Made by a program: the position numbers and the translations under genes. From assembly GCA_965112735.1 (NCBI GenBank), contig OZ218951.1, forward strand, positions 3,286,001-3,350,000: a DNA stretch of 64,000 bases. The letters are read 5' to 3'. The number at the start of each line of letters is the position of its first letter. Position 1 is the stretch's first letter. The stretch comes from Phaeosaccion multiseriatum. Taxonomy: Eukaryota > Protista > Ochrophyta, other classes. A model generated the notes under the pieces. It did not search any database. It saw only the letters and a program-made list of their open reading frames with translations, and was not told the origin of the DNA. Shown one piece after another: positions 4,948-7,900 of the stretch.

Positions 4948-7900
4948 AAGAAGGAGGCGGAGGTAGAAGAAGAAGAAGAAGAAGAAGAAGAAGAAGAAGA
5001 AGAAGAAGAAGAAGAAGAAGAAGAAGAAGAAGAAGAAGAAGAAGAAGAAGAAGAAGAAGAAGAAGAAGAAGAAGAAGAAGAAGAAGAAGGAGGAGGCGGA
5101 GGTAGAAGCGAGGAATATACGTGTTGCTGTCGACACTCTCCCTGGCTAGCTACGTTCTACGTCCACCTGCTCCCTCTCGATCTTCATCCTCCCTTGCACG
5201 GCAGACCAGACATAGCTACGAGCCGCCCAGACAAGAAGAAGGCACACAACCGTGGACGGGCAACACACCCCTTCCTCCAGTCACGCAAAAGGGCCACGCA
5301 TCGCTTCGCCTCACAGCCCAGGGTAGGACACACAGCACACTAGTCCACAAAGCAAATCAATCACTCTCTTCCTTGCCTTACCAGTGACAGGGCATATCTC
5401 GACGTAAAGAGGGCTTCGTTTCAGTCAAGGGGGGGGGGGGGGGCAGTCGAGGCCATCATTCGCAGCGAACCACGCACAGCAATGCGGACGCGGGGAATGC
5501 CTCTTCAGTCGTCAGCTTACAGGGATGAGCAAGGGGGGTATGATGGTGCCACTCAGAAGGACAACGCAAGGAGTAAATGATGGAGGAAGCAGGAGCAGCT
5601 TGCCCAGCTACGACTCACCAAACGCCATCCGGACCGACCGGAAGGCAGCACGCTTTGCCGGCGCGGGTAGAATAGATTACCTGAGCGTGGCCCCATACAC
5701 AGCGCAGGAGCAGAGAGTGGAAGCAGGAGGGGCAGGTTCACAGAGGAAGAGACAGTCCAAAAAGGTGTGTGCATTGTACTGACTGCAAGCTCATTACGAA
5801 GTGGCCCTACGTCCCCATCCTCAGCACGCCAGAGTCACAGTCATCAAAAGAAAGAAGACACGGCTTTGGCTCCACTACTGTTGTTCCACTAGCTACGATA
5901 CTGGCTGGGCGGCCCAGCGACTCGCCACCCTCTTCCTCCACTCGTGCACGCACCTTCAGCCATCGACAGGCATAGGCCGTCTCGCACTTGGCGGTGGAGT
6001 CCCCGTACAGAGTGCTCTGAGAGGGGCACAGGCCGGTGGGGAAAGCAGCACGCCTCAGCAAAGGCGGCGGGGCAGGCCAGAGAAGAGGGTGTGGCGAGCG
6101 ACGGACTTACCGAACAGGAATAGCCTCCAGTGCAAGCAGCACTTGACGTGTCATGTAGATGCGCGCCCTGCCATGCGTGTTTCGAAACAGTTGAATGGGG
6201 CGGGGGAACGAAGGGCGGGCGGACAGGCAGACAGGCTCGAGTTTAGTTCAAGGCTGGCCGGGTAGGCGTTGCGCCATGCTCCAAACTGCCTTTCCAATCT
6301 CCTCCTGGCTGGTCAGACTCATGATTGGGAACGAAGGGGCACACGCAATCACGCCTCAGCCAAAGGCGGCGGGGCAGGCCAGAGAAGAGGGTGTGGCGAA
6401 CGACGGACTTACAGAACAGGAATAGCCTCCAGTGCAAGCAGCACTTGACGTGTCATGTAGATGCACGTCCTGCCATCCATGCGTGTTTCGAAACAGTTGA
6501 ATGGGGCGGGGCAACGAAGGGCGGGCGGACAGGCAGACAGGCTCGAGTTTAGTTCAAGGCTGGCCGGGTAGGCGTTGCGCCATACTCCAAACTGCCTTTC
6601 CAATCTCCTCCTGGTCAGACTCATGACGGGGAACGAAGGGGCACACGCAATCCCACCTCAGCCAAAGGCGGCGGGGCAGGCCAGAGAAGAGGGTGTGGCG
6701 AACGACGGACTTACAGAACAGGATGTCTCTCCAGTGCAAGCAGCACTCGACGTGTCATGTAGGTGCGCGTCCTGCCATCCATGCGTGTTTCGAAACAGTT
6801 GAATGGGGCGGGGGAACGAAGGGCGGGCGGACAGGCAGACAGGCTCGAGTTTAGTTCAAGGCTGGCCGGGTAGGCGTTGCGCCATACTCCAAACTGCCTT
6901 TCCAATCTCCTCCTGGTCAGACTCATGATTGGGAACGAAGGGGCACACGCAATCACGCCTCAGCCAAAGGCGGCGGGGCAGGCCAGAGAAGAGGGTGTGG
7001 TGAGCGACGGACTTACCAAACAGGAGTGATCTCCAGTGCAAACAGCACTCGACGTGCCCTCGAATATCGCTTCCTGCGGATGGGGTGATGCAAACGATAC
7101 AGAGAGAGGACAGGCATGAGTTACACGCTTAGCAAGGTTAGTCAGGCCTCCAGAGAACGACTAACGAGGGGGCTCGTGCAGTCACCCTTGTCCTTGTAGG
7201 ACTCACAGAGCATCCGCGGTGTACGCTGCACGTCACTGGGCAGTTCTGCACACAGGGGTTCACGTCGCATGAAGAAGGAGGGGCCGTCGTCGCCGGTCCA
7301 GAGCAAACAGCAGGCCGGCCAGGATACAGCAGGGAGACCAACCAGGCATGCGAGCAGAGAGGCGGCGAGAGAGACAGGCGTGAGACAGCGAACAGTAGCG
7401 ATCTCCGCAACAGAACCCCCACGATAGATGGAGAGGAAGTCATGGAAGATGGAGAAGCAGAAAGCACAGGAGGGGACAAGCAAAAAGAGCAAAAGACAGA
7501 GACATGCAGGCTGCGACCGTGCCCGCTGTACCGCTCCTGGCTGTAGCTTCCCTCTCCTCCCACCACCACATCCTCTCCATCGGCAGCGGGTGCCCCCCCC
7601 CCCCCCCCCAAGCCCCCGGTCTCTCGCAGAGCAACTGACTGTAATCCAACAACCACACCAAGCCTTGGAGTTATCATAGGAGCCTGCCGCAAGGCTTGCT
7701 CTTCGATGTCGGCAACCAAATGGAGGCGGCAGGAGAGTCAAGTGCAGCAGGAGACAGGCCTTCTGGCTGCGCTCGCTCACCTTGAAGGTCACCCCCTGGC
7801 AGTACCAGTCCATAACGGAGAATGTTTCCAGTATTCGTCCGTCCGCACACAGCAGCAGGAGCCGAGGGGCAGGCAGGTATGGTGCCACATGGACGCGAGG

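What the first reader, a model, noticed from the sequence alone, without database searches (positions are those of the whole stretch)
6111..7073. Copy-number variation of a 57-nt one-repeat cassette exon (2, 1, 4, 1 copies per module)
Seen: an exact 302-bp exon+intron unit is duplicated. In transcription order the modules carry 2 (15709, 15407), 1 (11196-11140), 4 (7073, 6771, 6469, 6167) and 1 (1801-1745) phase 0-0 exons. Products include EAIFEGTSSAVCTGDHSCL, DAHLHDTSSAACTGETSCS, DVHLHDTSSAACTGGYSCS and GAHLHDTSSAACTGGYSCS. Inference: each exon is one disulfide-stapled solenoid turn, so domain length is tunable by duplication, and by skipping or mutually exclusive splicing.
Basis: partly seen in the sequence, partly recalled or inferred. 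Interest (0 to 1): 0.8.

Follow-up and report, generated by a model that had tools for sequence, protein, structure and literature searches.

The report
Tandem one-repeat exon duplication, algal gene
One small secreted-protein gene of a stramenopile alga has copied a 57-base exon together with its intron several times; each copy adds one 19-residue two-cysteine repeat, and this is one case of how a large, undescribed gene family in this genome changes its repeat number.

Summary
A 302-bp head-to-tail unit (57-nt AG/GT-flanked open exon plus 245-nt intron) sits at 6049-7056 on the minus strand, and the listed exons and peptides are correct. The period is exactly 302, but the copies are only 91-93% identical.

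There are two exon types. A-type occurs once per gene. B-type is the only one inside the 302-bp repeat, with 1, 0, 3 and 0 copies in the window and 11 in a paralogue on contig 13.

The "modules" are most simply five separate tandem genes. Each reads from an ATG to a stop and encodes 202-266 aa: signal peptide, EGF, cysteine-rich exon, N-cap, n repeats, C-cap, tail.

A 19-residue profile finds at least 135 such exons on 11 contigs. Every exon examined holds one repeat. Run lengths range from 1 to at least 37.

All 15 B units keep the open frame and AG/GT. Their exons vary more than their introns, at the family's hypervariable positions, so they are probably coding.

Length change by duplication is supported. 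The solenoid fold and splicing-based tuning are untested, because there are no RNA data and the spliced model was not searched or folded.

The closest precedent is the 72-nt one-LRR exons of brown-algal ROCO genes. The scan has already noted this family at other loci of this genome (s1-331316, s1-357221).

The parts
6049..7056 (-). 302-bp tandem array. It runs from the last 40 nt of the A exon, through three full exon+intron units, to the first ~62 nt of the intron after the last B exon.
   Evidence: TRF: period 302, 3.3 copies, 94% matches. Units are 91-93% identical.
7017..7073 (-). A-type 57-nt exon of gene g3 (EAIFEGTSSAVCTGDHSCL), phase 0-0.
   Evidence: AG/GT-flanked open frame. The acceptor region is 75% pyrimidine. 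It is in frame in the ATG-to-stop model.
6715..6771 (-). B-type 57-nt exon, copy 1 of g3.
   Evidence: HMM hit with E 2.3e-7.
6413..6469 (-). B-type 57-nt exon, copy 2 of g3.
6111..6167 (-). B-type 57-nt exon, copy 3 of g3.
5954..6016 (-). 63-nt C-cap exon (X1) that ends the repeat run. It is 66 nt in g1, g2 and g4.
   Evidence: Indels among paralogues are multiples of 3 nt, and the codons beside the second Cys are hypervariable. Runs at most other loci read also end with a 63-69-nt exon of this kind.
7207..7245 (-). 39-nt N-cap exon (NCPVTCSVHRGCS), a partial repeat before the A exon.
   Evidence: Alignment of paralogues; gene model.
8311..8447 (-). Exon E2 (137 nt, enters in phase 1, leaves in phase 0). 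It encodes a cysteine-containing, hypervariable 45-residue segment.
   Evidence: Variable sites 36/134 against 177/2143 in introns. No Pfam match.
9426..9657 (-). Exon E1 of g3: ATG, signal-peptide-like leader and EGF domain. It ends in phase 1.
   Evidence: Pfam EGF_3, E 5.5e-11, above the curated cut-off. The ATG is present in four C2 genes.
5512..5680 (-). Exons X2 (5619-5680) and X3 (5512-5551, ending in a TGA stop) with the intron between them. This is the 3' end of g3.
   Evidence: The ORF is continuous from ATG to stop, 266 aa. g1, g2 and g4 have a stop at the equivalent place.
15653..15709 (-). A-type exon of gene g1.
15351..15407 (-). The single B-type exon of gene g1.
   Evidence: It groups with the three g3 B units in the intron tree.
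11140..11196 (-). A-type exon of gene g2, which has no B copy.
1745..1801 (-). A-type exon of gene g4, which has no B copy.
18399..18558 (-). The distinct first exon of gene g1: ATG and a hydrophobic leader, no EGF, ending in phase 1.
   Evidence: Sequence read; ATG-to-stop model of 202 aa.

Best explanation
The 302-bp repeat is a real, in-register tandem duplication of one 57-nt phase 0-0 exon together with its 245-nt intron. It lies inside gene g3 of a head-to-tail array of five paralogous genes.

Each gene encodes a small secreted cysteine-rich protein of 202-266 aa. The order of parts is: signal peptide, EGF domain (absent in g1), a cysteine-containing variable segment, a 13-residue N-cap, n copies of a 19-residue repeat, a 21-22-residue C-cap and a short tail. 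The repeat consensus is xAxFx[G/D]TS[T/S]AxC[S/T]GxxSCx.

The genes belong to a family spread over the genome. In every member examined each 19-residue repeat has its own 57-nt exon, and run length is the main variable (1 to at least 37).

Inferred mechanism: the exon is symmetric, and neighbouring units share about 100 nt or more of homology. Unequal crossing-over or replication slippage therefore adds or removes exactly one repeat without touching the frame.

Status of each step:
- Shown: the repeat, its register, intact splice signals and open frames, ATG-to-stop continuity, the family-wide rule of one repeat per exon, and independent expansions on contigs 2 and 13.
- Inferred: that all copies are spliced in, and that each repeat is one rung of a disulfide-braced beta-solenoid-like rod. 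On that reading one face is conserved (A2, F4, S8, A10, C12, S17, C18) and positions 1, 3, 5, 15, 16 and 19 are hypervariable and exposed, which would fit a recognition or adhesion role.
For: - Repeat and exons.
- Paralogue on contig 13 with one A and 11 B exons and an open frame through all 12.
- All 15 B units keep AG, GT and the open frame.
- Within B exons the invariant residues are L4, T7, S8, A10, C12 and S17, and C18 is kept in 14 of 15 units. Codons 1, 3, 15, 16 and 19 vary at first and second codon positions. These largely coincide with the hypervariable positions of the whole family, which also include position 5.
- B exon diversity is 0.18 against 0.08 in the intron. In the four contig-2 B units, 14/57 exon sites vary against 14/241 intron sites, Fisher p about 1e-4.
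- E2, N-cap and A exons vary at 23-27% of sites against 8% in introns, while the signal/EGF exon varies at 4%.
- ATG-to-stop models with canonical GT-AG introns and no extra exons: g1 202 aa, g2 208, g3 266, g4 207.
- Pfam EGF_3 on exon E1.
- Family: 135 profile hits on 11 contigs. 118 AG-57nt-GT exons were read, spaced 220-302 bp; most runs end with a 63-69-nt cap exon, and run lengths are 1-12 and at least 37.
- The intron tree puts the contig-2 B units in one clade (support 0.93), apart from the contig-13 units.
- Chance control: 0 matches in 20 shuffles.
Against: - There are no RNA or protein data, so inclusion of the B exons is inferred.
- The B-type acceptor has the poorest pyrimidine tract in the family: 0.46 against 0.66-0.77.
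- dN is about equal to dS (0.21 against 0.19). This comes from only 57 nt and is noisy.
- In the contig-13 array the exon excess over the intron is not significant by site counts (p = 0.1).
- One contig-13 copy has lost its second Cys.
- g5 has an 8-nt deletion in its C-cap exon.
- The contig-13 EGF exon has no ATG, and its 5' end is unresolved.
- The fold is untested. The repeat has no Pfam match and no PDB profile match. No relative was found outside this genome.
Confidence: 0.72

Rival explanations
1. The B-type copies are an intronic minisatellite carrying pseudo-exons. Only the A-type exon is spliced in, so the proteins do not differ in length.
For: The B acceptor (...catggatggcag) is unique in the family and is pyrimidine-poor, 0.46 against 0.66-0.77. 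There is no RNA evidence. dN is about equal to dS. One contig-13 copy lost a Cys.
Against: 15 of 15 units keep AG, GT and an open 19-codon frame even though introns differ by about 8%. The structural residues are invariant, and variation falls on codons that are also hypervariable across the family. Exons vary more than introns, which is the opposite of neutral decay of a dead segment next to a live intron. Multi-exon runs are the rule at other loci that have strong acceptors.
Confidence: 0.13
2. The tandem exons are cassettes used by regulated skipping or mutually exclusive splicing. One gene would then yield isoforms with different rung numbers and surfaces.
For: Every exon is 57 nt and phase 0-0, so any subset keeps the frame. 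B acceptors are weak. Tandem one-LRR exons of brown-algal ROCO genes are reported to be alternatively spliced (PMC11378527).
Against: The introns are 245 nt, so there is no steric exclusion. No docking or selector complementarity was found. The only inverted repeat is a 12-nt palindrome upstream of each contig-2 B acceptor, and it is imperfect on contig 13. The intron RNA folds no better than shuffles, z = +1.0. No transcript data exist.
Confidence: 0.15
3. All the modules are exons of one large modular gene, not separate genes.
For: The EGF exon is also bounded by a pyrimidine tract plus AG and would be a symmetric phase 1-1 exon. On contig 13 the equivalent stretch has no ATG. The last contig-2 gene and the contig-13 gene share a 3' region that g1-g4 lack.
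Against: Four contig-2 genes have an in-frame ATG and a signal-peptide-like leader. g1-g4 reach a stop at the same place two codons past the putative donor. ATG-to-stop models close with no extra exons. Joining X3 (which ends in phase 0) to the next EGF exon (which needs phase 1) would require further unseen exons.
Confidence: 0.1
4. The extra copies are an assembly artefact.
For: Tandem repeats can be mis-sized by assemblers.
Against: Each copy carries its own substitutions: 14-23 differences per 302 bp and distinct peptides. The same unit forms an independent 11-copy array on another contig.
Confidence: 0.02

Closest known systems
One-LRR-per-exon ROCO genes (and repetitive-TPR-exon NB-ARC genes) of brown algae (Zambounis et al. 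2012, PMC3341825; Teng et al. 2024, PMC11378527)
   Same: One structural repeat per short symmetric exon (72 nt there, 57 nt here). Both show tandem exon duplication and shuffling, clustered paralogues, and variation concentrated at particular residues of the repeat. The lineage is the same broad one, since earlier notes of this scan place the genome near brown algae.
   Different: The repeat here is a 19-residue two-cysteine unit, not an LRR or TPR. The proteins are small and secreted, with an EGF domain and no ROC-COR or NB-ARC signalling domain. The phase is 0-0, against phase 2 reported for the LRR exons. Alternative splicing is documented there and unknown here.
Dscam-type clusters of tandem, mutually exclusive exons
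   Same: Arrays of homologous, equal-length exons made by tandem duplication, which vary a binding surface.
   Different: In Dscam exactly one exon is chosen, through docking and selector RNA pairing. No such pairing was found here. Inclusion of several exons keeps the frame, and the family shows fixed differences in exon number.
Exon-unit copy-number arrays inside genes, such as the kringle IV-2 repeat of human LPA or the 54-bp exons of fibrillar collagens (from general knowledge, not tested here)
   Same: Head-to-tail units that hold whole exons plus introns. Copy number sets protein length without breaking the frame.
   Different: Those are polymorphisms or ancient fixed structures in animals, with unrelated folds. 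Here only differences among paralogues are seen, not among individuals.
Disulfide-braced beta-solenoids such as the Tenebrio antifreeze protein, with 12-residue TCT coils (from general knowledge)
   Same: A short regular repeat with an invariant Cys pair per unit, small inward-type residues alternating with exposed ones, and a Thr/Ser-rich strand (positions 7, 9, 11).
   Different: The period is 19, not 12. No sequence similarity to any solved chain was found. The fold was not predicted here.

Membership tests
EGF-like domain (Pfam EGF_3, PF12947) | Six-cysteine EGF pattern scoring above the curated cut-off | tested here: met
   Exon E1 (window 9426-9657, minus strand): 42.9 bits against a cut-off of 28.5, E 5.5e-11. 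This concerns the N-terminal exon, not the repeat.
Brown-algal exon-shuffled repeat receptors (ROCO-LRR, NB-ARC-TPR) | Each repeat is encoded by its own symmetric exon in tandem arrays | tested here: met
   118 AG-57nt-GT exons spaced 220-302 bp, and no two repeats in one exon.
Brown-algal exon-shuffled repeat receptors (ROCO-LRR, NB-ARC-TPR) | The repeat is an LRR (LxxLxLxxNxL) or a TPR | tested here: not met
   The consensus is xAxFx[GD]TS[TS]AxC[ST]GxxSCx. Exons long enough to scan gave no Pfam hit.
Brown-algal exon-shuffled repeat receptors (ROCO-LRR, NB-ARC-TPR) | A ROC-COR GTPase or NB-ARC domain in the same protein | tested here: not met
   The ATG-to-stop models of 202-266 aa hold only leader, EGF, variable segment, repeats and tail.
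Brown-algal exon-shuffled repeat receptors (ROCO-LRR, NB-ARC-TPR) | Diversifying selection on exposed repeat residues | tested here: inconclusive
   Exons vary more than introns (pi 0.18 against 0.08; 14/57 against 14/241 sites, p about 1e-4) at fixed codons. dN/dS is about 1 on 57 nt, and no codon-model test was run.
Mutually exclusive tandem exon arrays (Dscam type) | Docking and selector RNA complementarity, or steric exclusion, between the alternative exons | tested here: not met
   The only inverted repeat is a 12-nt palindrome in each contig-2 B intron, and it is imperfect on contig 13. The intron fold has z = +1.0. Introns of 245 nt are too long for steric exclusion.
Mutually exclusive tandem exon arrays (Dscam type) | Exactly one exon of the array in each mRNA | not testable with these tools
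   No transcript data are available.
Disulfide-braced beta-solenoid | A regular short repeat with an invariant Cys pair and alternating conserved and variable positions | tested here: met
   S8, A10, C12 and C18 are invariant in a 47-exon alignment made without a motif filter. In 88 distinct repeats, A2, F4, S8, A10 and S17 are 83-98% conserved and positions 1, 3, 5, 15, 16 and 19 have more than 2.9 bits of entropy.
Disulfide-braced beta-solenoid | A repeat-stacked three-dimensional fold | not testable with these tools
The profile search against PDB sequences gave 0 hits at E up to 10.
Coding-region exon-unit copy-number polymorphism (VNTR type) | Copy number differs among individuals | not testable with these tools
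   There is only one assembly. The differences seen are among paralogous genes.

The most novel reading that the evidence does not exclude
The 57-nt exons are a combinatorial cassette system. The B-type exons, with their weak acceptors, and perhaps exons at other loci, would be included variably. Each gene would then secrete a set of rods that differ in rung number and in the hypervariable face. This would be an extracellular, cysteine-solenoid counterpart of the alternatively spliced LRR exons of brown-algal ROCO genes, used for recognition of microbes, mates or surfaces.
Probability: 0.13. Interest if true: 0.8.

Novelty: new variant of a known kind. Interest (0 to 1): 0.5.

Why it matters
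It documents a clear case in which protein length changes in steps of one structural repeat, because one repeat equals one symmetric exon and exon plus intron duplicate as a unit.

The family has at least 135 such exons and looks undescribed. The repeat has no Pfam or PDB match, and the searches possible here found no relative elsewhere.

Together with exon sites that vary more than the flanking introns, this points to a fast-evolving secreted recognition or adhesion family in a stramenopile alga. It would parallel the intracellular LRR and TPR exon-shuffling genes that have been proposed as brown-algal immune receptors.

The locus offers natural 1-, 2-, 4- and 12-repeat versions of one scaffold. 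These can be used to test how repeat number affects structure and binding.

Tried and rejected
- searched the genome with the EGF exon in the wrong frame (reference started 2 nt early). It still found the five close paralogues through DNA conservation, but it says nothing about diverged EGF exons.
- In one search the C-cap reference was mis-framed. It was repeated correctly, and neither run gave a Pfam hit. Single 21-22-residue exons have almost no power.
- HMMER search of the 1.84-billion representative library with exon E1: only generic multi-EGF proteins at 44-53% identity, with no self or orthologue hit. Three inspected hits (P0002, P0017, P0063) lack the 19-residue repeat.
- Word search with an intron-read-through ORF of the contig-7 paralogue that carries two repeats in frame: nothing. 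It sees only proteins of about 180-570 aa that share exact 5-mers.
- Metagenome scan with the 8-exon alignment: 191 pattern matches, none confirmed.
- PDB profile search: none.
- A search for an ATG-bearing first exon upstream of the contig-13 EGF exon gave one weak candidate only.
- Considered and rejected as drivers: intron RNA structure and the palindrome as a conserved selector.
- Joined step left out: the spliced models were assembled only inside local scripts, to check the reading frame.
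Full report
**What is in the sequence**

On the minus strand, Tandem Repeats Finder reports one array at 6049-7056 with period 302, 3.3 copies and 94% matches. Each is preceded by AG and followed by GTAAGT, and each translates to the quoted peptide. Start-to-start spacing is exactly 302.

The copies are not exact. Neighbouring units are 91-93% identical, with 14-23 mismatches. That divergence, and a distinct peptide for each copy, makes an assembly artefact very unlikely.

A motif scan finds 8 such exons in window 1-20000. It finds none in the other 44 kb and none in 20 shuffles.

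**Two exon types**

- Type A (E[AV]IFEGTSSA.CTG..SC.) sits behind a pyrimidine-rich acceptor and occurs once per gene.
- Type B (D[AV]HLHDTSSAACTG..SCS) sits behind ...catggatggcag and is the only type inside the 302-bp repeat.

The counts 2, 1, 4, 1 are therefore 1A+1B, 1A, 1A+3B and 1A. A fifth gene just outside the window has 1A.

Repeat homology begins 17 nt inside the A exon and ends about 62 nt into the intron after the last B exon. Single-copy genes have exactly that short intron after their A exon. One unequal exchange within this roughly 100-nt homology, or between whole units, would add or delete units in register.

The A exon of g1 has a B-like 3' half. This hints at such exchange.

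**The surrounding genes**

Canonical GT-AG introns and no further exons give complete reading frames from an ATG to a stop in four units: 202 aa (g1), 208 (g2), 266 (g3) and 207 (g4). The parts are, in order:

- E1: ATG, signal-peptide-like leader and EGF domain (Pfam EGF_3, E 5.5e-11). It ends in phase 1.
- E2: 134-137 nt, with acceptor ...tcag|GC, which restores phase 0.
- A 39-nt N-cap exon.
- n exons of 57 nt.
- A 63-66-nt C-cap exon.
- X2, then X3, which carries the stop.

Gene g1 has a different first exon (18399-18558) with its own ATG and hydrophobic leader, and it has no EGF. Gene g5 has an 8-nt deletion in its C-cap exon.

The "modules" are therefore most simply five tandem paralogous genes. 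A single large gene is not excluded. The EGF exon could also be spliced as a phase 1-1 internal exon, the contig-13 copy lacks the ATG, and g5 and the contig-13 gene share a 3' end that g1-g4 lack. However, that reading needs additional unseen exons to fix the phase.

The exons were joined only inside local scripts, to check the frame.

**Are the B exons coding?**

A paralogue on contig 13 (about 797.7-804.4 kb) has one A exon and 11 B exons. The frame is open through all 12.

All 15 B units on the two contigs keep AG, GT and the open frame. Within the exon, L4, T7, S8, A10, C12 and S17 never change, and C18 changes in only one contig-13 copy. Codons 1, 3, 15, 16 and 19 change at first and second codon positions.

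- Exon diversity is 0.18 against 0.08 for the intron.
- In the four contig-2 B units, 14/57 exon sites vary against 14/241 intron sites (p about 1e-4).
- In the contig-13 array the excess is not significant by site counts.
- Nei-Gojobori dN (0.21) is about equal to dS (0.19). Both exceed intron divergence (0.083), but 57 nt is too little for a firm ratio.
- Across the contig-2 genes, the E2, N-cap and A exons vary at 23-27% of sites. Introns vary at 8%, and the signal/EGF exon varies at 4%.

This pattern fits expressed protein with a conserved core and a diversifying surface. It does not fit a decaying pseudo-exon.

The one warning sign is the B acceptor. Its pyrimidine content is 0.46 against 0.66-0.77 for every other exon group in the family.

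**History of the copies**

A tree built from intron columns places the contig-2 B units in one clade (support 0.93), apart from the contig-13 units. The single B of g1 is sister to the three of g3. The arrays therefore expanded, or were homogenised, independently at each locus.

Both loci have A and B. The genes without B therefore most likely lost it.

**The family**

A 19-position profile of the exons finds 135 matches at E up to 1, and 83 below 1e-3, on 11 contigs. Many of these were not in the training set.

In the fetched loci I read 118 AG-57nt-GT exons. Every one holds a single repeat. Spacing is 220-302 bp. Most runs are followed by a 63-69-nt cap exon.

| Locus | Run lengths (57-nt exons per run) |
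|---|---|
| Contig 2, this array | 2, 1, 4, 1, 1 |
| Contig 13 | 12 |
| Contig 7 | 4, 5 |
| Contig 3, two loci | 3 and 7 |
| Contig 9 | about 3-4 |
| Contig 3, 5,089,928-5,102,059 | at least 37, made of repeated 3- and 4-exon blocks |

Across 88 distinct repeats:

- A2, F4, S8, A10 and S17 are 83-98% conserved. C12 and C18 were required by the scan; they are also invariant in the 47-exon alignment made without a motif filter.
- Positions 1, 3, 5, 15, 16 and 19 are hypervariable.
- Positions 7, 9 and 11 are Thr/Ser-rich.

Introns differ completely between subfamilies, while exon length, phase and motif are kept. That is comparative evidence for real exons.

**What it is like, and what could not be tested**

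The alternation of conserved small or hydrophobic residues with variable ones, and an invariant Cys pair every 19 residues, fit a stacked, disulfide-braced solenoid. This is inference only.

- The repeat has no Pfam match.
- The profile has no match in PDB sequences.
- No relative was found with the searches possible exon by exon.

These blanks are weak, because each repeat is a separate 19-residue exon.

Nothing can be said about splicing choices. Any subset of exons keeps the frame. No selector pairing or special intron structure was found.

**Comparison with known systems**

The closest documented system is in brown algae. Each LRR of the ROCO genes is encoded by one 72-nt exon, with exon shuffling, positive selection on exposed residues (PMC3341825) and alternative splicing of the tandem exons (PMC11378527).

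The present family shares the one-repeat-per-exon design and the variable positions. It fails the defining features of that family: it has no LRR or TPR and no ROC-COR or NB-ARC domain. It is also secreted.

I rate it a new variant of a known kind. Tandem exon duplication that sets repeat number is well known. The repeat family and its secreted EGF context appear undescribed.

**Earlier notes of this scan**

Two earlier notes describe the same family at other loci of this genome: s1-331316 (a 12-exon array) and s1-357221 (a 7-exon gene). I found arrays of 12 and 7 such exons myself, though I cannot be sure these are the loci those notes describe.

My gene model disagrees with two notes on this window:

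- The single modular gene (s1-350141).
- The paired 2-nt and 4-nt micro-exons (s1-350198). E1 joins E2 directly in phase, so they are not needed.

Noticed in passing
window 9426/8447 (E1 donor, E2 acceptor); equivalents in g2 and g4: The EGF exon ends in phase 1. The next exon starts ...tcag|GC, which completes a Gly codon and restores the frame. The proposed paired 2-nt and 4-nt micro-exons in this intron are therefore not needed for an open ATG-to-stop model.
   Followed up: partly
window 9561-9657 (also 4436-4532 and 13797-13893) compared with L013:4360-4427: The signal-peptide-coding stretch of the contig-2 genes is a pyrimidine-rich run that ends in AG. The homologous stretch of the contig-13 paralogue has no ATG and looks like the 3' end of an intron before a phase 1-1 EGF exon. 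The leader of the contig-2 genes may have arisen from a former polypyrimidine tract.
   Followed up: partly
window 6178-6189, 6484-6495, 6786-6797: A perfect 12-nt palindrome, TGTTTCGAAACA, lies 9-15 nt upstream of the acceptor of each contig-2 B exon. It is imperfect in the contig-13 units, so it may be chance.
   Followed up: partly
L031/L019/L021 (contig 3, 5,089,928-5,102,059): A 12-kb array of at least 37 one-repeat 57-nt exons, built from 3- and 4-exon blocks about 1.15-1.22 kb long that recur with identical peptides. No cap exon was seen inside the array. This may be the longest member of the family.
   Followed up: partly
L014:2948-3005 (contig 2, about 3,282,948-3,283,005; fifth gene, just outside the window): The C-cap exon of g5 has an 8-nt deletion relative to its paralogues. 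This shifts the frame to an early stop, so g5 may be a pseudogene or may skip that exon.
   Followed up: no
window 15653-15709: The A-type exon of g1 has a B-like 3' half (…AACTGGASCS). This fits exchange between A and B units.
   Followed up: no
window 108-708, 3568-3937, 4614-5089, 8814-9078, 9746-10116, 13089-13310, 13984-14334, 17161-17474: Long trinucleotide microsatellites, (TCT)n, (CTC)n and (CTA)n on the gene strand, recur at the same places in each gene unit: in the first intron and between genes.
   Followed up: no
repeat positions 7, 9, 11 across the family: A conserved Thr/Ser-rich strand (TSTAT or TSSAA) alternates with inward-type S8, A10 and C12. On a stacked fold this would give a regular hydroxyl ladder on a face other than the hypervariable one, reminiscent of ice-binding or carbohydrate-binding solenoids.
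   Followed up: no
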